Shown here piece after piece: positions 1-15,133 of a stretch of DNA of 64,000 nt (position 1 is its first letter; each line of letters opens with the position of its first letter). The notes under the pieces were generated by a model that saw only the letters and a program-made list of their open reading frames with translations, was not told where the DNA came from and did no database searches. Both the position numbers and the translations under genes were made by a program. The stretch comes from Macrostomum lignano. Its lineage: Eukaryota. The stretch covers positions 1 to 64,000 of the forward strand of contig NIVC01001797.1 in assembly GCA_002269645.1 (NCBI GenBank). The letters run 5' to 3'.

Positions 1-3000
1 TGACTGCCTACCAACAGAAGGCCTGTGTCAGCAAGGCTATTCGGGTGTCAAGAGCAGCCGTAAAGTTCATATTCGAGCCGCCGCATGCGGGACAGTACGC
101 CCTGGCCATCAGCTCTGGCGTTACGTGTCAGATGAAAGATTAAAAGGCAGCACGTTTGTCACTTACGCTGTTCACAGTCACAGAGCTGGGTCTCAGCCAA
201 TTTTATCCCGGATGGCCATGAAGATCTGAACGAATTCGGCTCCGTCAAGAAATGCGTGAAGAGGGGCTCAGCTCAGATGAGTCAGGCGAACTGAGGGCAC
301 GCCAATGGAGAAGCAACTTTCGAGATTACTGCACTAGAAGACAGGTTTGGCATAAGGTGAACACTATTGTTAAATTTCGTACGCTTCTACTAAAATTGAA
401 GGTTAGAATACTTCGAATACAGGTTTCTATTAGCAGGAAATTGGCAGCATAGTAGGCAATTATGAGAAGAGACACTAAAATAGAGACTGTAGCATTATTT
501 CTTACTTTTGAAATACAGGCGTAGCTACTGAACTATTACCAATTGCAGAAATCTGATGTGCCAAGCGCTGGTCCGGACAACAAGCCCCTGCCGACGAGCA
601 GCGTGCTCGTGTGGCGCGACATTCACCGCAACGCCTTCCTGTTCCTGGCGCCCGATTCCGGCTACTACGCTCTGGTGCTCTACGAGAACGGTCGGCCCGT
701 CGGCCAGTTCCTGGTGGACGCCAGCAGCGAAGCCAAGGACGGCGCGAGCTTCCCGCTGCCCGACTGAGCCGCGTCGGAGGTCTCGGACTCGCCGCTGCAA
801 GCAAGGCGAACGGGGAGGCTGTCGGCTGGTGCCACTGAGCCACCAAACGCCGTACGTTCGAACCGAAGAGTTCGAGCTGGCGATGCGCTTCGGTGTTGAT
901 GGCGCAGGCGAAGAAGGCGACGCAGGCATCGATCTGAAGTCGGAGATGCTGGGTATCGGAGCAGACGGAGGGACCGAGTCGGTCGGCGACTACTCGTTAG
1001 TGAGCGGTGTCGAGGGCGGCGGCTTCGAGGTGCGGTGCCGGTTCCCGAGAGCGGGCCACTACCTGCTACGCCTGTCGTTCCGAGAGAGCGGCGCGAGACT
1101 GGCGCCCGTACTTCACGTACTTCGTGCGAGCGGTGGGCCAGCTGGACGGATCTGCATCCGCGTTTCCGAGCCTCGGTGCGGACTGGCCGGTCGGCGGAGC
1201 GCTCATCGAGCCGCTGGACCGCACGCTGTCCGTTGGACAGCCGACGCCGATCCGCCTCCGTTCGAGGACGCCACAGCTGTCGGCGCTGTGGAGGTGGTCG
1301 ATGAGCGAAGCGGCAGTCGGGAGCCGTTGAGTCGCGACCCGCAGGACCCGCGGTTGTGGTTCGGGTCCGTGACGGCATCTGCGGGTAACACCGATGGAGC
1401 GAACACTGCGGGGAGCGGCGGCGTGACGGTGGTGGCCCGTGTCAACGACGGCGTTGAGAACACAGCTTGTAAAGTTCGACGTTGAGTCGGAGAGCAGCGC
1501 AGAGGCCAAGGCGGCGGCACTGCGCGAAGCTCGGGAGCTAAACGAGCGACGTCGGGTGGCCGAGGAGAATCGGCAGCGGAAACAGGAGAACCGACACCGC
1601 CGCGATAAGGGACTGGAGTCGCTGCCTGTTTGGGTACTTAAAATTGTTCTGCCATCGGTTTTATCTCGAAATGCATTTGTTCGAAATATTTTTGGTATTT
1701 TTTATCCTTTTCCTGACAGAGTCACGCTGAGGTGAGAGCTGCTGCCGATTTGGCTGCAAAAAGGCTGGCCTTGGCGTACGAGAAAGAAGAAAAAAGAGCA
1801 AAAGCTTTTGCGAAATCAGCTGCGGCAGAAAGAGCTCAGCTCAGAGCCTAGCAGCAGCAAAAGCAGCGGCTGAAGCCAAAGCGGCTTTGAAAGCGGCAGC
1901 AATGGAGGCATCAAAGTTGGCGGCTTTAGCACTCGCGGTGTCGAGGGCGGTGGCCGAGTCCCAATCGGCAGTATTGGCGGCTGCTGATGAGGAACTGGAA
2001 ACAAAGACCGCGGCTGATGCGAAGGATATCTCGGCGGCATCGTATCGATCGGAAATGACTGAGAAGGCGGCTGTCAAAGCCAAATTAGCGGCTGAGTCAG
2101 CGAACGACGTGGCAGCCGAATTGCAGGCGCTTGCAGCTGCAGCAGCAGAAGAAAAAGTGACTGCCAGTTCGGCAGCTGATGCGGCTTCAAAAGCGGCTGA
2201 GGCTGCAGCCTTCGATGCGGAGATCGCCGGTTCTCCGCTACCCGACGAGGCTGCAAAGTTTGCATCATCAGCGTCGCACGAAGCCGAAGCTGCTGCCAGG
2301 GCAGTCACCGAGATCGCTGCAAAGTCAGCCACCGAGGCCTCCATCGCGAAGAGGGGAGCCCGCATGGCGGCTGCTTCGGCGGAGACGGCAGCAAAGTCAG
2401 CTGCGGTTGCGGCTGCTGCAGCGCAGGAGGCCACAGAAGCGATTGCGGCGGAAAAAGCTGAGCTGAATTATTTGATTGCTGAGCTGGACGTGGCCTTGTT
2501 GGACCGAAAGTTAACTCGGGTGCGCAAGGCCGTTGAGTCGTTGGAGGCTCGCGAAAAGGAGCTGCGCGGCAGTCAGTCGAGAAAGCTGAAGGAGGCACAA
2601 CAGACTTTAACGGCGCTACAGAATAGAAAAGGTTCTGTTTTTCTGTTGACAAAACAAGTGGCAGTTGTGCTTAAATTCTGATGTATTACTGAAGGTAGCT
2701 TGTATTGTAAAACCGTCACATTAATTTGGCCAGTGAAAATTTCGATCCGTGCTCTATCCAACCTCCGCAGACCTCCGGGACGCCATGGCGGACGCTCAGC
2801 GAGCCCGCAGCACCGACCGCCTGCGCGCGTTGGTGCACCGTCTGGAGGCTGAAGCCGAGTCGCAGCCGCTGACGGAGGCGCAGCTGGCGCTGTTCCGCGA
2901 GGACCTGCGGCTCGCCAGAGAGGCCATCCAGCGAGATGACAAGCTGAAGCGAATTCCCTCACACCGGCTGGAGATGAGTCCGAAGAGTCTGTCCGAGCTG

Positions 3001-3983
3001 AAGCAGTACAGCCGGCCAGTGGAAACGGTGCACCGGACGGTGCAGGCGCTGCTGCTGCTGCTCGGGTACTACGAAAAGCGCACACGGGTGAGTCAAGGAC
3101 TACCCAAGTAGAAGGGCGGGAAACTACATTTTCGGGGAACTTTTTGAGAGGCTTGTTTTATTGAAGAAATACATTACGGAGAATGGAGATTTTCATTTTT
3201 TCAGCGTAAAATTTGTAATGATCCATTTGATGGCGGACAAACCCAATGATCATCTTTTGATACGACTTGATTTTCTGTTAGTTCTATAGATATTCGTAGA
3301 GCTTTTTTGTTCAGAAAGTTTGTATTTTGTGTTAATTTTATGAGCGCAATCCTAATTACATGTCCAAACATCGTAAAAATGACACAACTTAATTCATTCG
3401 CAATTTCGCATTGAGGGCGGAGAAGCTTTTTAAATGCTAGGTCGGTGTGTAGTGTACAGAGTGCAGAGCTTGTGTTCTATAGATTGTACTGTGCAGTCAT
3501 TTTGCTGCCCTCACTGGGTCTGTTTACTCGTGAACTTCTCCACGTTACCAACAGAAGTGGCACCGCTGCCAGCCGCTGTTGAAGAGCATCAACAAGTTTG
3601 TCGCGGAGTTTCAGCCGCGCTTCGTTGATCCGCGCATCGCCGCCCGAAGTTCGGAGATTCTGGGCAGCATCGACAAGCGCGAGATCGCCCTGCAGAGCGC
3701 TGCCGCCTTCGCCTTCTACCAATGGGTTCGTTTGAGGAATTTTTCTTGACAATGAGAGTGCAGCATGGCAGCCTGACTCCTTCATCAATCAATTTTACTC
3801 CAGGCGGTCAGGACCACGCAGTCCATCAAGGATGCGACCTCAGTGGACAGTTTTGTTCCAGCCAGCATGGTTCAGCAAAGGTGGATCCTTCGGGTCACGA
3901 TGGAGGAGGACTCTGCGTTGGACTTTCAAGACAAGGGCATTCGCAAGAAGAGTGCACGTCGTCCTCGGACTTCAAAAATTTGA
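1..3983 (+). CDS. KY/hillarin-type (transglutaminase-like family) gene, paralogue 1; 5' end lies outside the window. Ig-like beta repeats, Ala-rich helical region, C-terminal dynein-MTBD-like domain. Several frameshifts in 1-1900
   Basis: Exons approx 1-344, 519-1629, 1720-2631, 2771-3087, 3555-3725, 3804-3983 (TGA), with GT-AG borders. Motifs FEPPHAGQYALAI, FLFLAPDSGYYALVLY, CRFPRAGHYLLRLSF and GALIEPLDRTL resemble the C-terminal repeats of KY/hillarin proteins. The last three exons are in frame and colinear with paralogue 2 (LSELKQYSRP..VQALLLLLG / KWHRCQ / FYQW). Confidence 0.7.
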
Positions 3984-4480
3984 ACTTTAAACTCGCTCTT
4001 CTTTGCTAAAAGTAGGGCAAAGAGTATTTTAAAACTGAATTTTCAAACGCATTGAAATAATGGGAAATCATCTCAAGTGAAATTTTGCAGTCAAGTTTAT
4101 CAATCAATTGAGACTACCAGATTCAAACCTGTCGAATTCCATATGATTTTGTAAACATTACAGAAGATTTTGACTTTTTCATCGTTTTAGCAACATTCGT
4201 GTACTGTACGTGCTTTAAATACCTGCCGAAGTTTTTTCTGTGCAAACGAAAGTCCAAGACTGCCACAGACAACTTTTGGGCTTTCGACCACAGACGAAAT
4301 TTTGTCGGGTATTATAGAATTTAACCAGCACGAGTGAACGTGAAGGAATCCCATTGACATATGGCCAAGCATTCTTAAATGGAATTTACTGCACGGCTTG
4401 GGATTTACTGCACAGTCGCGTTATCTATCTATGTCTATGGCTAAAACCAGAAGAATGCTTTGCCCATAAATCAATGAATC

Positions 4481-4557
4481 TATCACTAGGTTTCGAGTGC
4501 GTAAATAGTCTTAGCACGAGTGCCATAGACTATTTACGCACTCGAAACCTAGAGATA
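4481..4557. repeat. Near-perfect inverted repeat (26-bp perfect arms)
   Basis: CTAGGTTTCGAGTGCGTAAATAGTCT (4486-4511) pairs with AGACTATTTACGCACTCGAAACCTAG (4527-4552). Confidence 0.9.
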
Positions 4558-4584
4558 AATCTACCATTGTTAGATGAGTCATCG

Positions 4585-6440
4585 CAGGGACAACTAAAAC
4601 CCTCGGGACGCAAAACGAGCCAATTCATGGCAAAAAATCTGAGGGGCTCGCTTAAAAGTATTGTTCTATGGCTTTTTCAAGTCTTCTCTGCTATCAGGCA
4701 AATTAAAATTGCTTTAGTTGCGGCCAGCAGTGAAGCTAAGCTGAACTATATCAAGAAAAGCATTTTTTATTCACTTGATGAAATGCCAAGAAAGTGCAGC
4801 GTATTTCCGTGCTCGTCAAATTACAACTCTGAAGCCGTTCGAACACGGACATTTGCGTTTCCCAGAGATCCACAGGAGCGAGAGCGATGGAGAAAGGCGC
4901 TGCCAAATATTCTCCAGGTAAGAAACCAGATCATTTGCTGTCATTACTGCTGCATAATTCCGCTTCAATTCTGCATGCCAGTCTCGTCCAAACAACTTGA
5001 AACCCAAAATTTATTATTTTAGAGAGTGACTGACAATATGGGCGTGTGCGTAAAGCATTGGCCAAGCGATGCTCCAATGGTCAAGAAAAACTCTACCGAA
5101 AGGCCAATTAATCCTCCTTCTGTTTTTAATGGAGTTCCTAGCTCGTGTTTTGTTCAGAACCAAGGTACGTAACTTAAAGATTGCTCAACACTAAGCGTCT
5201 ATATCGATTTTGCCGCTCACAATTATCTTACTTTTATTTTTACTCGTATTTTAGACCAGGACCGACAGGCCGAAAAGCGCGGTGTTCTTTCTGACGCGAG
5301 GTGCGGCGACATCGATGAGATGGACGCTTTTCAGCTGCTTGATTTTTTGCCGGCATGGGAAAGTTTTCGAGCTGAGGTGAAAAATTCGGATGTCGTATCT
5401 CGACATGCACTAAACACAGCTATTCTGAACGAAGACGTTTACTTGTTTACGTTAGATAAAGATGGAGACCTCTCTGTTCGAATTTTTGTCCCACCCAACT
5501 TTCTGATTCGTGCATTCAAACTGCATACACCGATTTCGGTTCGAGACTTGTTGGGATTTCAACCGACACTCAAGCGCTGGATGCTGTTGTCGTGCAGTGC
5601 AAAAATTCCGACGCCAATCCCCAAAGTGAAGTCGAAGCGTTTGTTAGTAGAATCAGTGATGATATAGATTCTGACTCTGATTTGGATCCGTCGCTTCAGT
5701 TTTTGATTCGACAACTTAGCCTTACATTAGTAAATCGGAACAATCGCCGCTATGACATTTCACTAGTGCGACAGTCAGCATTGCTCTACTTGATCAGTAG
5801 TTCGGCTTACTCTTACCTACGGAAGCTATTGCCATTGCCTCATCCCCGAACGCTGCAGCTGCAACTAGCAGGTACAGGAGAAGTTGGCACAGAAACCGAC
5901 GCAGCCGGTGTGATCCAGTCAGTTTTTGCTAGTCTATCAGGAGCTCAGCGAAACTGCGTAATATGTTTGACGAAATGTACATACAACCGTCCGTTCGATA
6001 TCGATGCCGTCACCTTCTGGGTCGAGCCGTCGACGATCCGGACCAGGTTCCTTTATGTACGAGCTACTGACTGTTTGTGTCGTCTTGTCCTTGGAGTTCC
6101 GTATTTGCTTCTATCTTCTTGCCGTTGGAGTTTCATCTTCGCTTTCATCCTTTATATTCTTGCCGTTGGAGTTATATCTTTGCTTTCATCTTTTATCTTC
6201 TTGCCGTTGGAGTTTTTTTGTTGATATGGCGGTTACTTTATTGTAAATAATTATATCACTGGTTCCTATTCTTTAAATTAAATACTCGACATTGCCTCGC
6301 TTTACTATTTAATCTAACCGTTAATGCCTGATAGCAGAGAAGACTTGAAAAAGCCATAGAACAATACTTTTAAGCGAGCCCCTCAGATTTTTTGCCATGA
6401 ATTGGCTCGTTTCGCGTCCCGAGGGTTTTAGTTGTCCCTG
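4585..6440 (+). mobile_element. Internally deleted P-superfamily (THAP9-like) DNA transposon, 1856 bp, 116-bp TIRs
   Basis: TIRs 4585-4700 and 6325-6440 (CAGGGACAACTAAAACC..., one mismatch seen). GAGTCATCG directly flanks both ends (4576-4584, 6441-6449). Encloses a THAP + P-type transposase remnant. Confidence 0.9.
4783..6050 (+). pseudogene. THAP-domain P-element-like transposase, frameshifted and truncated after the first catalytic Asp
   Basis: Exons 4783-4917, 5023-5164, 5255-~6050. THAP motifs MPRKCSVFPC..FAFPRD..RERW, CVKHW, PPSVF. P-transposase motifs SALLYLISSSAYSYLRKLLPLPHPRTL and (frameshifted) DEMYIQPSVRY..LLG. Frameshifts near 5590 and 5965. Confidence 0.85.
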
Positions 6441-7352: not shown

Positions 7353-8405
7353 TTATACACCAGGCGTCTTCCAGCACATGACGATATGGCGACCAATCTT
7401 GAAGAAAAATGACAGCCCAGGCTCGTGGCTATAGCTGGCCCAGTACTGTCCCGTAACCATGACAACGTGCCAAAGCTTGCCGAACTGGCCGTCCAGCTGC
7501 TGCTTCAGCCGGCCAGCGACATCTTTCTCATCTTTGCCGCGTCTCTGGGCGTCGCGAAATATTTCAGTCAGGTCCACCTGCATCTCTAGGCCCATGCTGG
7601 AGGCGATGACGGTGACGTCCTCCGGCAGCCGGTTATTCCTCAGACACTCGGCCTTGAGCTGGTTGAGTCGGTAGATTCGCCTATTTTAGGAAAATGCGAT
7701 GGGTTGCCTTCGTGCGTTACCACAAGTTCATTCGACGCATTGCACGAAGTTGGGTTTTGCGAGCTAATGATGACGCAGCAATAGATACTATGTGCTCTAA
7801 AGAATAAAAAGTTCAATTGAATCATGAAAAACAGTATACAGTCTTACGCTTGCTTCGGATTGAGTCCCAGAACGTTGCAGTATTCGTCCAGTGTAATCGC
7901 GCCGTCATCGTTCTCATCAAATAGCTTCATCCATTTCTGAAAAAGCGAATTCGGTAAATGCCATGACTTGGATGTTTGTGTGTAACTATTACTCAATACT
8001 ATCTGCGAGTCTGATGAATGCAGCTAAATAACATTTCAGCGACCATTTTACCTACCTTGATACCAACATAAGATCTGTTAGATCAGTTTAAACCCTTAAA
8101 TACCGGAGTCCGGATCACCGTGTGAATAATTACACAAAGCATTGGAAACACTGGAAGCTACAAACCTCGCCAAAATTGGCCTCAAACTGGCTGCTGCTGG
8201 TCATGTAGGCCGCTAATTCATCCGGTGTGATGGACTCGCTCCGATCCTTGTCGACCGCAAAGAACGCATCAAGGAAGGGATTCTGTGCAGCTGCCTCCTC
8301 TGCTGCGACGCGTCCCGGTGACAACGGCGGTGGAGCAGGCGATGTTGAGCCCGAAGCGGAGGCAGTGGAGTGCGCTGGCGACACAGAGAGCGACATGCTT
8401 CGCAT
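7353..8405 (-). CDS. Tegument allergen-like (TAL) protein: two EF-hands plus a dynein-light-chain-like domain, ~218 aa, 3 exons
   Basis: Exons 8405-8166, 7936-7848, 7680-7353 join in frame. EF loops DKDRSESITPDE and DENDDGAITLDE. C-terminus LPEDVTVIASSM..LDGQFGKLWHVVMVTGQYWASYSHEPGLSFFF..MCWKTP closely matches the Sm22.6/SmTAL pattern ([29 protein letters not shown]..WRTP). Confidence 0.9.
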
Positions 8406-10418: not shown

Positions 10419-13400
10419 ATGCCAGAAGGAAACATTTTACAAGTACTAGACTACTACAAAAATTATGCGCTAGAAGGAGATGAAATTCCATTAAATAACT
10501 ATCTTTTGAGTTCCCCAAAAGGATTTCCAACTTTGCGCAGCCTGGTTGACAGTCAGCTGCAAGCTGCCAAACCGAGTGCGGCGAGGGCCAACCAGCCACA
10601 GCCAACTCCGTGTAGCAGACGAAAAGAAGAGCTGTTTCAGATTCAGAAATTCACCGATATTGATCAGGCAGCAGAGTCGGTGCAACTGAACTGGCAGGAC
10701 GACTGGGAGACGCTTTCTCAGAAATTGTTTCGGAATTCGACCGGCGATCTCGAAAAAGTGCGCTCTGCTTTTGTGTTTACCTGCAGAGACTGGAACAACG
10801 GACTGCCAGCTCGCAACAAAGAGAGCTCAGCGTATAGGCTTATTCGAGAGAGAAACTATGCAGAGATTTTTGAGAACTTGGTCAGGTAAGGACTGCTCAT
10901 TCTGAAGAGTTCAGGTTCAGTCATTCAGTTTGTTAAGGAAATTAATTTTTGTAGCAAATTGTGTGTAAAGATTGTTGAAGAAGAGCACGTGAAGCCTGTA
11001 TGTACGATTTGATGCGAGAGTGCCTTGAAAGTGCTAAATTTTTATTTTAGAAAAGAGACTATCGCATTGGGAGTGAAACCTAGTAGATTAGCCTCTTAGC
11101 AGACCAGTGTCTTAGTTGATCAGTGTCTTAGTAGACCAGTGTCTTAGCAGACCAGTGTCTTAGCAGACCAGTGTCTTAGTAGACCAGTGTCTTAGTAGAC
11201 CAGTGTCTCAGTAGACCAGTGTCTTAGTAGACTAGTGTCTTAGTAAACCAGTGTCTTAGTAAACCAGTGTCTTAGTAAACCAGTGTCTTAGTAAACCAGT
11301 GTCTTAGTAAACCAGTGTCTTAGTAAACCAGTGTCTTAGTAAACCAGTGTCTTAGTAAACCAGTGTCTTAGTAGACCAGTGTCTTAGTAGACCAGTGTCT
11401 TAGTAGACCAGTGTCTTAGTTGATCAGTGTCTTAGTAGACCAGTGTCTTAGTAAACCAGTGTCTAAGTAGATCAGTGTCTTGGTAGACAAGTGTCTTAGT
11501 AGACCAGTGTCTTAGTAGACCAGTGTCTCAGTAAACCAGTGTCTAAGTAGATCAGTGTCTTAGCAGACCAGTGTCTTAGTTGATCAGTGTCTTAGTAAAC
11601 CAGTGTCTTAGTAAACCAGTGTCTTAGTAAACCAGTGTCTTAGTAAACCAGTGTCTTAGTAAACCAGTGTCTTAGTAAACCAGTGTCTTAGTAAACCAGT
11701 GTCTTAGTAAACCAGTGTCTTAGTAGACCAGTGTCTTAGTAGACCAGTGTCTTAGTAGACCAGTGTCTTAGTTGATCAGTGTCTTAGTAGACCAGTGTCT
11801 TAGTAAACCAGTGTCTAAGTAGATCAGTGTCTTGGTAGACAAGTGTCTTAGTAGACCAGTGTCTTAGTAGACCAGTGTCTCAGTAAACCAGTGTCTAAGT
11901 AGATCAGTGTCTTAGCAGACCAGTGTCTTAGTAGACCAGTGTCTTAGTTGATCAGTGTCTTAGTAAACCAGTGTCTTAGTAAACCAGTGTCTTAGTAAAC
12001 CAGTGTCTTAGTAAACCAGTGTCTTAGTAAACCAGTGTCTTAGTAAACCAGTGTCTCAGTAAACCAGTGTCTAAGTAGATCAGTGTCTTGGTAGACAAGT
12101 GTCTTAGTAGACCAGTGTCTTAGTAGACCAGTGTTTTAGTAGACCAGTGTCTTCGCAGACCAGTGTCTTAGTAGACCAGTGTCTTAGTAGACCAGTGTCT
12201 TAGTAAACCAGTGTCCTCGTAGACCAGTGTCTTCGCAGACCAGTGTCTTAGTAGACCAGTGTCTTAGCAGACCAGTGTCTTAGCAGACCAGTGTCTTAGC
12301 GGATCAGTGTCTTAGTAGACCAGTGTCTTAGCAGACCAGTGTCTTAGCGGACCAGTGCACCGAGAGTCTTGAGGCTCGATCGCACCTCCATAAAATGGAG
12401 TAAATTTTTGCGTGATCACGCAACTTGTACATATTCTTTAGTCCCTTTGTGCGTGAGTGCTGCGACTTGACGGTTCATCTAGCGTAGCGGTGCACTAACC
12501 AAGAGTGACTTAGTGAGCCTTTTCCCATAGTAATGAAAGTATAGCAAACGCAGGAAAATATTTCAGAGCCGGAGGCGTACCAATAGAACGAATCGAAGGC
12601 TGGAAGAAGTCTGCAGACTCCAAAGTTGGCTTCCATGTCAGACGATCGGTAAATCCTTGGCACGCCTGCTTCGTGAGCGGAGAATGGCGACTGGTTGACG
12701 TCCACTGGGCTGCCTCGTCGGTATTCAGCAGCCGCACTGGCAGATACCGCGAGCTCGACAAAGATGGCGAGTTGTCCCAGACCCTGACAGCCAGTGAGAC
12801 CCCTCAGATTGAGGAGAAGTTCGGCCGCAACGAGTTTTTCTTTCTAACTGATCCCGAGAAGCTGGTAATGAGCCACTACCCGGACGATAGGAGCTGGCAG
12901 CTGTGTAAGAAGCCGATCAAGTTCGAGCAGTTCGAGCAGATGCCGCACTATTTTGCTGGCTCTGAGCAGGCCATGCCGCACTGCTGGCAGGTGGAGCCGC
13001 TCAACTATCTGAAAAATGTCATTCTAGCTGAAGAGGAAGGCCGAGTTGAGATTCTTTTCAGGTAATTTATTTTACAATTTTGGACGTGCAAACTTTTCAA
13101 CAGCTCGTCGTACACCCGTACAAAGTGCCGATTGGAATGGATATTGCAGAGTGCCTGACGCCGAGCTGCTTCGAGATTTAGAATTCGATGCCAAGGTCAG
13201 CATCGCCAAAAGGTGCTTGTCGAGTTCTGATGCGCCAGCATCCAACAGGTTGAAACATGGCAGAATCATTCACTGCGACCGGCTGGGTCCTGCACCATCG
13301 GACATTGTCCAGGTTGTGTTTCGGTCACCTTGCGCTGGCAAGTTCGCTCTGACAGTTCGAATTAAAAAGAAGTATGGAGGCAGCGGCTGGGCTCGACTGG

Positions 13401-13510
13401 CCACCTACATTGTGCACTGTCCTGTGGTAGGTGTCCCGTGGTTTGTCTGCCTCAGTTTGTCTTTCCTTAGTCTATAGGGAAAGCCATGTGTTTCTCTGTC
13501 ATCAGCATTG

Positions 13511-13607
<97 letters not shown>

Positions 13608-15133
13608 TATCATCATCATCATACTGTGCAATTTTATTTTCAACATTACGAGCGTATTAGAGATCGCCTACTGAAGAGTAGCAAGTAAAGAATTTTAAGC
13701 GACTTATGTTGCGTGCGAAAGGCGCACTAAAAGTTTTGAATTATTAAAGTTTATTACAATTTATAAAAAAATTGAAACCATCTGCTTCAAAAAGCAGTCC
13801 TTGTCTATCGTGAGTTACACTTGCACTTTCCTGCTAATCTGTGAAATTATATTGTCAATGCAGGTATCTAAAGAATCAAAATTATCAAAGTCATCTCAAC
13901 CGCCAAATCCAGAACCAGAGTCAGAGTGCGGCCCAAATCTCAAAACAAGGATCAGTGATCATAGATCCGCCAAATCAAGACACAAATCCAAAGCCATATT
14001 CAAGGCCAAATTCAGATCTAGATGCAACTCCAAAACCAGAGCCAAAACCATACATCTGGAGCCAAAACCGGAGTTCAAGCCCTTTGGGTCGAAAGTTTCC
14101 TATGGGAAATTTGACCAGAGAGCAACTGGCTCAGTTGCGCAGCTACCCGAAGCCGCCAAAATGGGAATTCAAGGCGATCAAAGCCATACTGCTCATGCTG
14201 GGCTTTTACGAAGGACGGAGCAACGTGAGTGGCAGGACGGTTTTGTAGGGTGGCAACAATTTCAAGCATACGAAACGTTTGCTAATTTAAATTTCAGAAA
14301 TGGGTCCGCTGTCAGCAACTAATCTCTGCCATACCTCAGGCGGCCAACGATTTAATTATCGAATCCGTTCATCCGGAAATCGCTGCCAGATGCCTGCAAC
14401 TCGTTCAGTCGAAATCTGGCACGCCAACGGCCAAGGATAACCCGGAAGAGAAAGCTTCGTATATCTTCAGGGAGTGGGTGAGTTTGCGATGCAATTGCGA
14501 TGTGACTGAGGGTCAGGGCATGAGATAGGTGTCGGGAGGGGCAGAGGGGCAGCGCGTGAGGTGGGTGTCGGGAGGGGCAGGGGGAGCACGTGGAGGTGAG
14601 TGTCGGGAGGGGCAGGGGGCGTGTGGAGGTGAGTGTCGGGAGGGGCAGGGGGCGCGTGGAGGTGGGTGTCGGGAGTGGCAGGGGGGCGCGTGGAGATGGG
14701 TGGTCGAGAGGGGCAGGGGAGCGCGTGGAGGTGGGGTGTCGGGAGGGGCAGGAGGAGCGCGCAAGGTGTGGGTATCGGGAACGGGTCTTTAGTTTCAATT
14801 TATTCGCTGAAATAAAATTTCTGTCAGAACTTTATGTATGCAATCTAACATTAAATTCTCAAGGTTGAAAAGAACGCCAACGCAGTCAAGGAGGTGACGC
14901 CGCCCGGCGATTTCAAAGCAGCTGACAAACAGCGGCAGGTGCAGCTGTTCGGCATCACACCCGAGGAGGAGGCCCATTGGGACTGGGAGGACAATATAAA
15001 AAAGTCTGAAGTGGCCCAGAAATTCATCTGCTTTTGCGACTATTGTCACGTTGCGATTTATAATAACGATTTAAAGATCCACCTGCACTGCAACGTGTCC
15101 AGAGCGAATGGCTTGCGCAAAAATGCGCTGTGA
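10419..15133 (+). CDS. KY/hillarin-type gene, paralogue 2: degenerate transglutaminase-like core, one Ig-like repeat, Pro-rich linker, dynein-MTBD-like domain, C-terminal CxxC..H..C motif
   Basis: Exons 10419-10885, 12567-13061, 13150-13426, 13864-14224, 14298-14477, 14864-15133. Motifs DLEKVRSAF, NPWHACFVSGEWRLVDVHW and EFFFLTDPEKLVMSHYPDDRSWQL are typical of KY/hillarin. Exon 4 needs a net frameshift, and the start codon is uncertain. Confidence 0.8.
11099..12357. repeat. 16-bp minisatellite (AGACCAGTGTCTTAGT)n in intron 1 of paralogue 2
   Basis: Read directly; variant units recur in longer blocks. Confidence 0.95.
13511..13622. repeat. (CAT)n microsatellite, intronic
   Basis: Read directly; source of the poly-His and poly-Ile artefact ORFs. 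Confidence 0.95.
14520..14765. repeat. ~32-bp G-rich intronic minisatellite
   Basis: Unit GGAGGTGAGTGTCGGGAGGGGCAGGGGGCGCGT. Confidence 0.9.

What the first reader, a model, noticed from the sequence alone, without database searches (positions are those of the whole stretch)
13864..15133. Second paralogue keeps the same MTBD-like domain and adds a C-terminal zinc-finger-like motif
Seen: LTREQLAQLRSYPKPPKWEFKAIKAILLMLGFYEGRSN|KWVRCQQLI..HPEIAARCLQL..ASYIFREW|V is colinear with paralogue 1, has introns at the same positions (before KW and after W), and even keeps the dynein-like PP motif. It ends in CDYCHVAIYNNDLKIHLHC (CxxC..H..C). Inference: retention in two highly diverged paralogues argues that the domain is selected, and points to a small family of TGase-like + MTBD-like proteins.
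Basis: partly seen in the sequence, partly recalled or inferred. Interest (0 to 1): 0.7.

Follow-up and report, generated by a model that had tools for sequence, protein, structure and literature searches.

The report
Dynein-type microtubule-binding domain on KY-like protein
A flatworm gene for an inactive transglutaminase-like (KY/hillarin-type) protein ends in a domain that is truly related to the microtubule-binding tip of the dynein motor; many invertebrate animals have this combination and I found no paper on it, whereas the supposed zinc finger at the very end has no support.

Summary
The window is Macrostomum lignano DNA. The two paralogues share two phase-0 introns at identical alignment columns.

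The "MTBD-like" reading is right. Profiles of this domain hit only dynein heavy-chain microtubule-binding domains (MTBDs) in the PDB (E down to 1e-10). A template-free AlphaFold model of the core has pLDDT above 90 over most of its length, and its best Foldseek matches are dynein MTBDs. Paralogue 2 alone is too diverged to hit anything. It links through paralogue 1 (E 3e-16) and annelid and mollusc homologues.

The family is not small. About 290 clusters at 50% identity have E below 1e-10. The named ones come from sponge, annelids, molluscs, a brachiopod, an echinoderm, amphioxus and flatworm. The domain is nearly always at the extreme C-terminus. It mostly follows a KY/hillarin-type transglutaminase fold that lacks the catalytic Cys and His, plus KY Ig-like domains. 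It lacks dynein's long coiled-coil stalk and ATPase.

The most likely function is a static microtubule anchor on a non-catalytic scaffold; this is inferred, not shown.

The C-terminal CxxC…HxHC is seen only in near-identical M. lignano copies of paralogue 2, matches no Pfam family and is modelled as disordered. It is not supported as a zinc finger.

The parts
10419..10885 (+). Paralogue 2, exon 1: start ATG and N-terminal half of the KY/hillarin-type transglutaminase-like domain. The catalytic Cys position reads RERNYAEIF, with no Cys.
   Evidence: Splice model. Identical junction in P0001/P0002. Alignment with active KY proteins.
12567..13061 (+). Paralogue 2, exon 2: second half of the transglutaminase-like core (…NPWHACFVSGEWRLVDVHW…). 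The catalytic His is replaced by Asn; the Asp is kept.
   Evidence: The acceptor tatttcag|A follows P0001 (…ENLVRAGGVP…).
13150..13426 (+). Paralogue 2, exon 3: KY Ig-like domain remnant (…VVFRSPCAGKFALTVRIKKK…).
   Evidence: P0001 junction …EILFRVPDAE…. Pfam Ig-like_KY E 3.2e-4 in P0001, below the curated cut-off.
13874..14224 (+). Paralogue 2, exon 4: a Q/N/S/P-rich low-complexity linker, then the start of the MTBD-like domain from about 14108 (NLTREQLAQLRSYPKPPKWEFKAIKAILLMLGFYEGRSN). The 5' border is uncertain: 13874 or 14016.
   Evidence: The P0001 and P0002 models differ at this border.
14298..14477 (+). Paralogue 2, exon 5: central and last helices of the MTBD-like domain (KWVRCQQLI … ASYIFREW).
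14864..15133 (+). Paralogue 2, exon 6: continuation of the last helix, the conserved post-MTBD motif (FKAADKQRQVQLFG, 14912-14953), then a lineage-specific tail with the Cys/His cluster (15029-15091) and the stop codon.
   Evidence: Alignment A4. AF2 block-mean pLDDT 86-96 up to about residue 160 and below 50 from residue 176.
2758..3087 (+). Paralogue 1: end of the exon that carries one helical repeat unit, the CC1-like helix and the start of the MTBD-like domain (…LSELKQYSRPVETVHRTVQALLLLLGYYEKRTR). The exon continues upstream of 2758.
   Evidence: P0015 is identical.
3555..3725 (+). Paralogue 1: exon homologous to paralogue 2 exon 5 (KWHRCQPLL … AAFAFYQW).
   Evidence: tblastn..
3804..3983 (+). 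Paralogue 1: last exon, with the post-MTBD motif (FVPASMVQQRWILRV) and a short basic tail. It has no Cys/His cluster.

Best explanation
Paralogue 2 is a Macrostomum lignano member of an old metazoan family. In this family a catalytically dead KY/hillarin-type transglutaminase fold, with KY Ig-like domain(s), is joined through a linker to a C-terminal domain homologous to the dynein heavy-chain MTBD.

Shown:
- Homology of the domain to the dynein MTBD.
- The domain architecture.
- The extreme C-terminal position, without a long return coiled coil (CC2) or AAA+ modules.
- Loss of the catalytic Cys and His.
- Two shared phase-0 introns in paralogues 1 and 2.
- A tandem array of such genes.

Inferred:
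- The domain still binds microtubules. Because it is not coupled through a stalk to an ATPase, it would act as a static, nucleotide-independent anchor that tethers the non-catalytic scaffold to the microtubule lattice.
- The short conserved segment after the last helix (PAxxxxRQ+E+[F/L]G) would fold back on the stub of CC1 and fix the domain in one state.
- The Cys/His-rich last 45 or so residues of paralogue 2 are a recent, lineage-specific extension with no evidence of a fold.
For: Organism and gene family:
- 88-94% identity to M. lignano 'TGc domain-containing' proteins, and E 5e-21 to an Owenia KY-like protein.

Homology to the dynein MTBD:
- A 4-sequence profile hit 48 PDB sequences at E up to 10. 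All are dynein heavy chains, aligned from the first to the last MTBD helix, best E 3e-8.
- A 28-sequence profile hit 50 PDB sequences at E up to 1e-3. Every best stretch lies at the dynein heavy-chain stalk/MTBD position (one carries another depositor name), best E 1.2e-10.
- Pfam MT (PF12777) gave E 9.5e-4 in the Liolophura homologue. It passes threshold in related tandem-MTBD proteins.
- UniRef already names one M. lignano relative of paralogue 1 'MT domain-containing protein'.
- Chain of homology: par2-par1 3e-16, par1-Owenia 1e-12, par2-Owenia 2e-3.

Structure:
- Template-free AF2 of the par2 C-terminus gave pTM 0.72, with ten-residue block means of 87-96 over residues 21-160 except one loop block at 68.
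- The four best Foldseek PDB matches are dynein MTBD/stalk structures: 3err_A prob 1.00, 5ayh 0.99, 9dgr_e 0.89 and 9dgq_n 0.41. 6kio_M gives TM 0.57 and rmsd 3.6 Å over 115 columns.

Architecture and spread:
- 1348 representatives have E up to 1e-3 and 290 have E up to 1e-10. The top 150 are 96-2303 aa, so none is a full-length dynein.
- The domain ends within about 30 residues of the C-terminus in most of them.
- Of 42 long hits, 28 carry Ig-like_KY and 18 carry Transglut_core.
- Named members come from Lingula, Ruditapes, Helobdella, Owenia, Branchiostoma, Nucella, Oscarella, Apostichopus, Patella and 'hillarin-like' scallop proteins.

Other support:
- The domain is cytoplasmic where topology can be read. 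In amphioxus CLCA-like proteins it follows a signal peptide, an ectodomain and one strong TM helix.
- The catalytic Cys and His are absent in all MTBD-bearing KY-like proteins aligned, but present in fish and starfish KY.
- Net charge of the core is +4 (par2) and +8 (par1). This fits the positively charged dynein interface described in PMC4987762.
- The duplicated copy L002 differs by 8 synonymous and 6 non-synonymous changes in the MTBD part.
Against: - No experiment or localisation data exist for any member, so microtubule binding is inference from homology only.
- Paralogue 2 is a diverged member. Alone it hits nothing in the PDB or Pfam. It has a 5-residue deletion where the family has KTGKESLKR, and EEKASYIFREW in place of the family's SAGAATFYVW.
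- Foldseek E-values are weak (best 0.058), and TM normalised to the query is only 0.38-0.44 for the MTBD-bearing structures cited. Part of this is because about a quarter of the model is disordered.
- In dynein, affinity depends on the CC1/CC2 registry. A domain without the stalk could be locked in a low-affinity state.
- Net charge across the family ranges from -8 to +9.
- The substitution counts between the two recent copies are too small for a reliable dN/dS.
Confidence: 0.6

Rival explanations
1. The domain keeps the dynein-MTBD fold but has been re-used to bind something other than microtubules, for example septins, actin-associated or intermediate filaments, or a partner protein. In that case the proteins are scaffolds for another cytoskeletal system.
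For: - Pfam's MT model does not reach its threshold on the KY-type members tested. Single-sequence searches with par1 and par2 against the PDB find nothing.
- The stalk that controls dynein's affinity is missing.
- Family net charge is variable.
- From my own knowledge, not tested here: vertebrate KY is a Z-disc/filamin-C partner, and Drosophila hillarin was reported to interact with a septin.
Against: - The alignment to dynein covers all the helices, including those that contact tubulin in dynein.
- The domain is always cytoplasmic where topology can be read.
- No other ligand of this fold is known.
Confidence: 0.25
2. Paralogue 2 is a decaying tandem duplicate. The MTBD-like region is a relic under relaxed constraint, and the unusual C-terminal tail is neutral sequence.
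For: - Paralogue 2 is the most diverged member in the alignment. It has lost the coiled coil and helical repeats upstream, which are replaced by a low-complexity Q/N/S/P linker, and several family-invariant motifs.
- Its transglutaminase and Ig-like parts fall below Pfam cut-offs.
- Public gene models disagree on two junctions.
Against: - The reading frame is open over six exons with canonical splice sites.
- A second genomic copy (L002) keeps the same open frame. It has more synonymous than non-synonymous changes in the MTBD part and only one conservative change in the last exon.
- AF2 models the core with high confidence.
- P0001 starts two codons upstream of the ATG. This looks like a transcript-derived ORF, which is an inference.
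Confidence: 0.1
3. The C-terminal CxxC…HxHC cluster is a real small zinc-binding module added to paralogue 2. It could mediate a protein or nucleic-acid contact.
For: - There are four Cys and three His within 21 residues (15029-15091). They are identical in the duplicated copy L002 and in P0001-P0003.
- Relatives of the KY family can carry LIM domains, although at the N-terminus (P0007).
Against: - No Pfam family matches at E up to 10.
- pLDDT is below 50 for residues 176-209.
- The spacing does not fit the first finger of a LIM domain (C-x2-C-x16-23-H-x2-C, from my own knowledge).
- The cluster is absent from paralogue 1 and from all non-M. lignano members aligned.
- Identity between the two copies is uninformative, because the whole exon differs by one base.
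- The homologue search with the tail returned nothing, and the index did not even recover the known identical copies.
Confidence: 0.1

Closest known systems
Dynein heavy chain microtubule-binding domain (tip of the stalk; Pfam PF12777 'MT'; e.g. PDB 3ERR, 5AYH, 6KIO, 6RZB)
   Same: - About 110-residue all-helical globular domain.
- Shared sequence signature: [DE]-I-x-E-[IL]-[KR]-S-[YF]-x-x-P-P-x-x-V-x-x-V-M-x-A-x-x-L-L-L-G … W … [S]-x-A-A-x-x-[FL]-x-x-W.
- Profile E down to 1e-10.
- The predicted fold matches.
   Different: - It is not inserted between the long antiparallel helices CC1 and CC2, and there is no AAA+ ring or linker.
- It sits at the extreme C-terminus, followed only by a short conserved motif.
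- It is fused to non-motor proteins.
- Paralogues 1 and 2 have a 5-residue deletion in the middle of the domain. Paralogue 2 also has a 3-residue insertion before the last Trp.
KY (kyphoscoliosis peptidase) / hillarin / C. elegans LTD-1 family of transglutaminase-like proteins (Pfam PF01841 + PF23265 Ig-like_KY)
   Same: - The N-terminal two thirds are homologous.
- NCBI names several MTBD-bearing relatives 'hillarin-like', 'HIL-like' or 'KY'.
   Different: - The catalytic Cys and His present in fish and starfish KY are missing.
- Two long amphioxus KY-like proteins (P0008, P0012) end without the MTBD-like module.
- The LIM-bearing relative scanned (P0007) has its LIM domain at the N-terminus.
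- Paralogue 2 has only one weak Ig-like_KY remnant.
Inactive ciliary transglutaminase-like domains (CC2D2A, CEP76, DRC7/CCDC135; Zhang & Aravind 2012, PMC3495828)
   Same: A catalytically inactive transglutaminase-like fold, proposed to act as a peptide-binding module on microtubule-based structures.
   Different: It is a different clade of the superfamily. That paper mentions neither KY/hillarin nor a dynein-MTBD fusion.

Membership tests
Dynein-type MTBD (PF12777 region) | Significant sequence similarity to dynein MTBDs across all six helices | tested here: met
   Family profiles that include par1 and par2 hit only dynein MTBDs in the PDB, E 3e-8 and 1.2e-10. par2 links to the family through par1 at E 3e-16.
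Dynein-type MTBD (PF12777 region) | The single sequence reaches Pfam's curated threshold for PF12777 | tested here: not met
   No PF12777 hit for par1 or par2 at E up to 10. Liolophura homologue: 18.7 bits against a cut-off of 24.
Dynein-type MTBD (PF12777 region) | Compact helical bundle fold of the MTBD | tested here: met
   AF2 without templates gave block-mean pLDDT of 87-96 over the core apart from one loop block at 68. Top Foldseek PDB hits are 3err_A (prob 1.00), 5ayh (0.99) and 9dgr_e (0.89). 6kio_M gives TM 0.57 and rmsd 3.6 Å. E-values are weak.
Dynein-type MTBD (PF12777 region) | Embedded between the long antiparallel coiled-coil helices CC1 and CC2 that connect to an AAA+ ring | tested here: not met
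   The domain ends 0-30 residues from the C-terminus in most family members, and 72 residues from it in par2. No AAA+ or dynein motor Pfam families appear in the KY-type proteins.
Dynein-type MTBD (PF12777 region) | Binds the tubulin lattice | not testable with these tools
   This needs co-sedimentation, TIRF or cryo-EM. The only indirect support is net positive charge and cytoplasmic topology.
KY / hillarin transglutaminase-like family | Homology of the N-terminal region to KY-like proteins (Transglut_core + Ig-like_KY) | tested here: met
   E 4.7e-21 to Owenia and 2.7e-18 to Liolophura KY-like proteins. Pfam on the flatworm protein itself is below cut-off: Ig-like_KY E 3.2e-4 and Transglut_core not found.
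KY / hillarin transglutaminase-like family | Cys-His-Asp catalytic triad of active transglutaminase-like peptidases | tested here: not met
   In the alignment with Oryzias and Patiria KY, par2 has no Cys at the GxC position (a gap, flanked by RE…RNYAE) and Asn at the His position. Only the Asp is kept.
Zinc finger (LIM or other Pfam zinc-binding modules) | Match to a known zinc-finger profile or ligand spacing, a folded module, and conservation of the ligands | tested here: not met
   No Pfam hit at E up to 10. pLDDT below 50. The ligands are absent in par1 and in all other family members aligned. Metal binding itself is not testable here.

The most novel reading that the evidence does not exclude
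The dynein MTBD is not exclusive to dynein. It also exists as an autonomous, stalk-less, mobile cytoskeleton-binding module that was shuffled early in animal evolution, and possibly earlier given the tandem-MTBD proteins in protist transcriptomes. It was shuffled onto KY/hillarin pseudo-transglutaminases, single-pass CLCA-like and EGF membrane proteins and CARD proteins. It could explain the subcellular targeting of hillarin-type proteins. It would also give a natural experiment on what the MTBD does when uncoupled from the motor.
Probability: 0.45. Interest if true: 0.75.

Novelty: new variant of a known kind. Interest (0 to 1): 0.6.

Why it matters
The dynein MTBD has been studied almost only as the tip of a motor whose affinity is set through a 15-nm coiled coil. 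A large natural family that keeps the tip but lacks the stalk and the ATPase offers three things:

- A test of whether the tip is an autonomous microtubule binder, and in which affinity state it rests.
- A functional handle on KY/hillarin-type proteins, whose biochemical role is still unclear (KY mutations cause myopathy in mouse and man; this is my own knowledge).
- A marker for tracing how dynein's MTBD arose or spread.

I found no paper describing this architecture. Automatic annotation, however, already labels one M. lignano relative an 'MT domain-containing protein', so part of this is latent in databases.

Tried and rejected
- Pfam on the par2 C-terminus and the par1 domain: nothing relevant at E up to 10.
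- Pfam on the par2 N-terminal 433 aa: nothing at E up to 1.
- Single-sequence PDB searches with par1 and par2: no hits. Only profiles work.
- Word-indexed homologue search with the domain profile: mostly short ORF fragments, and it missed known members. The exhaustive representative search was needed.
- Word-indexed search with the Cys/His tail: no candidates at all, not even the identical M. lignano proteins, so it is uninformative.
- My first splice choices (12531 and 13126 as acceptors) were replaced by 12567 and 13150 after comparison with P0001 and P0002.
- 13864 as an in-frame exon start was rejected on phase grounds.
- dN/dS between the window and the duplicated locus L002: too few differences to be decisive.
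- Literature searches for KY-like + dynein, 'MTBD-like' and PF12777 found nothing on this architecture.
- Mapping the published mouse contact residues (K3298, R3382) onto the family was not completed. I had no verified mouse sequence alignment and did not want to rely on memory.

Full report
**What is in the sequence**

The window is Macrostomum lignano genomic DNA. A spliced model of the gene around the finding is 88-94% identical to three M. lignano 'TGc domain-containing' proteins.

The six-exon model on the + strand is:

| Exon | Coordinates |
|---|---|
| 1 | 10419-10885 |
| 2 | 12567-13061 |
| 3 | 13150-13426 |
| 4 | 13874-14224 |
| 5 | 14298-14477 |
| 6 | 14864-15133 |

It has canonical GT/AG sites and an open frame. 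The junctions RSN|KW and REW|VEK are the ones used in the public protein P0001.

The 5' border of exon 4 is unsettled. P0001 supports 13874. P0002 uses 14016 with a donor at 13430.

**Paralogue 1**

tblastn of exon 5 against the window finds the colinear exon at 3555-3725.

The C-terminal exons of paralogue 1 (…-3087, 3555-3725, 3804-3983) translate exactly to the public partial protein P0015.

Both introns are phase 0 and fall in the same alignment columns as in paralogue 2. The two domains share 29% identity over 137 residues, E 3e-16.

The contig holding P0015 extends the window 7 kb upstream at 99.2% identity. It shows two things:
- Paralogue 1 has its own transglutaminase-like and KY Ig-like part.
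- A third tandem copy ends just upstream of it.

**Is the domain dynein-like?**

Alone, neither paralogue hits Pfam or the PDB.

The full-length search retrieved annelid (Owenia) and chiton (Liolophura) KY-like proteins of about 1050 aa. Their C-termini read …ISELKSYSKPPPLVHTVMTAVFLLLG…W…SAGLATFFVW….

| Test | Result |
|---|---|
| Profile of 4 domains vs PDB | 48 hits, all dynein heavy chains, aligned across the whole MTBD, best E 3e-8 |
| Profile of 28 sequences vs PDB | 50 hits at E up to 1e-3, all at the dynein heavy-chain stalk/MTBD position, best E 1.2e-10 |
| Pfam MT (PF12777) on Liolophura | E 9.5e-4, below threshold |
| Template-free AlphaFold2, last 209 residues of par2 | pTM 0.72; ten-residue block means 87-96 over residues 21-160 except one loop block at 68; below 50 from residue 176 |
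| Foldseek vs PDB | 3err_A, 5ayh, 9dgr_e and 9dgq_n ranked first (prob 1.00, 0.99, 0.89, 0.41); 6kio_M TM 0.57, rmsd 3.6 Å over 115 columns; E-values weak |

Homology to the dynein MTBD is therefore well supported. Paralogue 2 is a diverged member.

**How wide is the family?**

An exhaustive profile search of 1.84 billion representatives gave 1348 proteins at E up to 1e-3 and 290 at E up to 1e-10. The top 150 are 96-2303 aa, so none is a full-length dynein.

In most of them the domain ends within about 30 residues of the C-terminus.

Of 42 long hits, the Pfam families found were:
- Ig-like_KY in 28
- Transglut_core in 18
- MT in 7
- CARD in 3
- CLCA + VWA in 2

Named members come from these groups:
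- a sponge (Oscarella)
- annelids (Owenia, Ridgeia, Helobdella)
- molluscs (Ruditapes, Mya, Argopecten and Pecten 'hillarin-like', Patella, Nucella, Gigantopelta, Sinanodonta)
- a brachiopod (Lingula)
- a sea cucumber (Apostichopus)
- amphioxus
- further M. lignano loci (P0051, P0074, P0093)

One M. lignano relative is already auto-named 'MT domain-containing protein'.

In amphioxus CLCA-like proteins and in one EGF-laminin protein of unidentified source, the domain lies on the cytoplasmic side of a single strong TM helix. Some unnamed or protist proteins are made of 3-5 tandem copies that pass Pfam's MT threshold.

**The rest of the protein**

An alignment with fish and starfish KY, which have the Cys, His and Asp, shows that all MTBD-bearing KY-like proteins examined lack the Cys and the His. 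This includes paralogue 2. They are non-catalytic, like the 'hillarin-like' proteins.

After the last MTBD helix a subfamily, including both paralogues, keeps a short motif PAxxxxRQ+E+[F/L]G. AF2 models this segment with high confidence in paralogue 2. I read it as a stub of CC2, which is an inference.

Paralogue 1 keeps one helical repeat unit and a CC1-like helix directly upstream of the domain, with Ala/Glu/Lys-rich sequence further upstream. Paralogue 2 has replaced these with a Q/N/S/P-rich linker.

**The zinc-finger idea**

The Cys/His cluster (15029-15091) is real, but nothing else supports a zinc finger:
- It matches no Pfam family.
- It is modelled as disordered.
- It occurs only in M. 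lignano copies of paralogue 2.
- The duplicated locus L002 differs from the window by a single base in the last exon, so identity there says nothing about constraint.

**Mechanism**

The most likely mechanism is a non-catalytic KY/hillarin-type scaffold anchored to microtubules by a stalk-less dynein-type MTBD that acts as a static binder.

Homology, architecture and cytoplasmic location are shown. Microtubule binding, and the locking role of the post-MTBD motif, are inferred.

Weak supporting points:
- Net positive charge of the core, +4 in par2 and +8 in par1. The dynein interface is described as positively charged in PMC4987762.
- More synonymous than non-synonymous changes between the two recent copies in the MTBD part, 8 versus 6.

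Rivals, each given in its own section with a refuting test:
- The fold has been re-used for another ligand.
- Paralogue 2 is a decaying duplicate.
- The tail is a true zinc module.

**Novelty**

I found no paper that describes a KY/hillarin + dynein-MTBD architecture or a non-dynein MTBD family. The search covers open-access literature only, and database auto-annotation has partly caught the domain.

I rate it a new variant of a known kind. The domain is the known dynein MTBD, in a new stalk-less, non-motor context.

Noticed in passing
window 7353-8405, minus strand: A gene with EF-hand-like exons and a dynein light chain (LC8-type) domain (Pfam PF01221, E 4e-15). This is the architecture of flatworm tegument-allergen-like (TAL) proteins. 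The same neighbour (EF-hand + Dynein_light) lies next to the duplicated copy of paralogue 2 in L002.
   Followed up: partly
window 4354-5022, + strand: An ORF between the two paralogues has a weak THAP-domain match (MPRKCSVFPCSSNY…; E 0.0024, below the cut-off). It may be a remnant of a transposase-derived gene.
   Followed up: partly
window 11094-12357, 13499-13622, 14528-14761: Three introns of paralogue 2 are largely tandem repeats: a 16-bp unit x79, (TCA)x41, and a G-rich 35-bp unit x6.8.
   Followed up: no
L001 1-1052 and 3779-7356 (L001 7085-12410 = window 1-5336): Upstream of the window lies the transglutaminase-like/KY Ig-like part of paralogue 1. Further upstream is the end of a third tandem KY-MTBD gene (1386-aa product) whose MTBD exon is 96% identical to window 3586-3736.
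   Followed up: partly
P0062, P0064 (amphioxus CLCA-like), P0180 (EGF-laminin), P0204 (amphioxus CARD protein): The same MTBD-like module sits at the cytoplasmic C-terminus of single-pass membrane proteins with CLCA/VWA or EGF ectodomains, and on CARD proteins. It therefore behaves as a mobile module.
   Followed up: partly
P0090, P0081, P0122, P0135, P0184: Proteins made of 3-5 tandem MTBD-like domains. P0090 and P0081 pass Pfam's MT threshold. P0135 is from a marine protist transcriptome (MMETSP); the others scanned are from unnamed environmental assemblies.
   Followed up: partly
window 14912-14953 (par2) and 3846-3890 approx. (par1); alignment A4 columns about 153-175: A short motif PAxxxxRQ+E+[F/L]G follows the MTBD-like domain in a subfamily from several phyla. 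It may be a remnant of the start of dynein's CC2.
   Followed up: partly
P0004, P0018, P0019, P0027, P0042; window about 2760-2900 (par1): Upstream of the MTBD-like domain many members carry repeated helical units of about 35-45 residues with the pattern L-x2-A-x4-D-x3-L-x2-A-I. I could not place this in a known family. Paralogue 1 keeps one unit and paralogue 2 keeps none.
   Followed up: no
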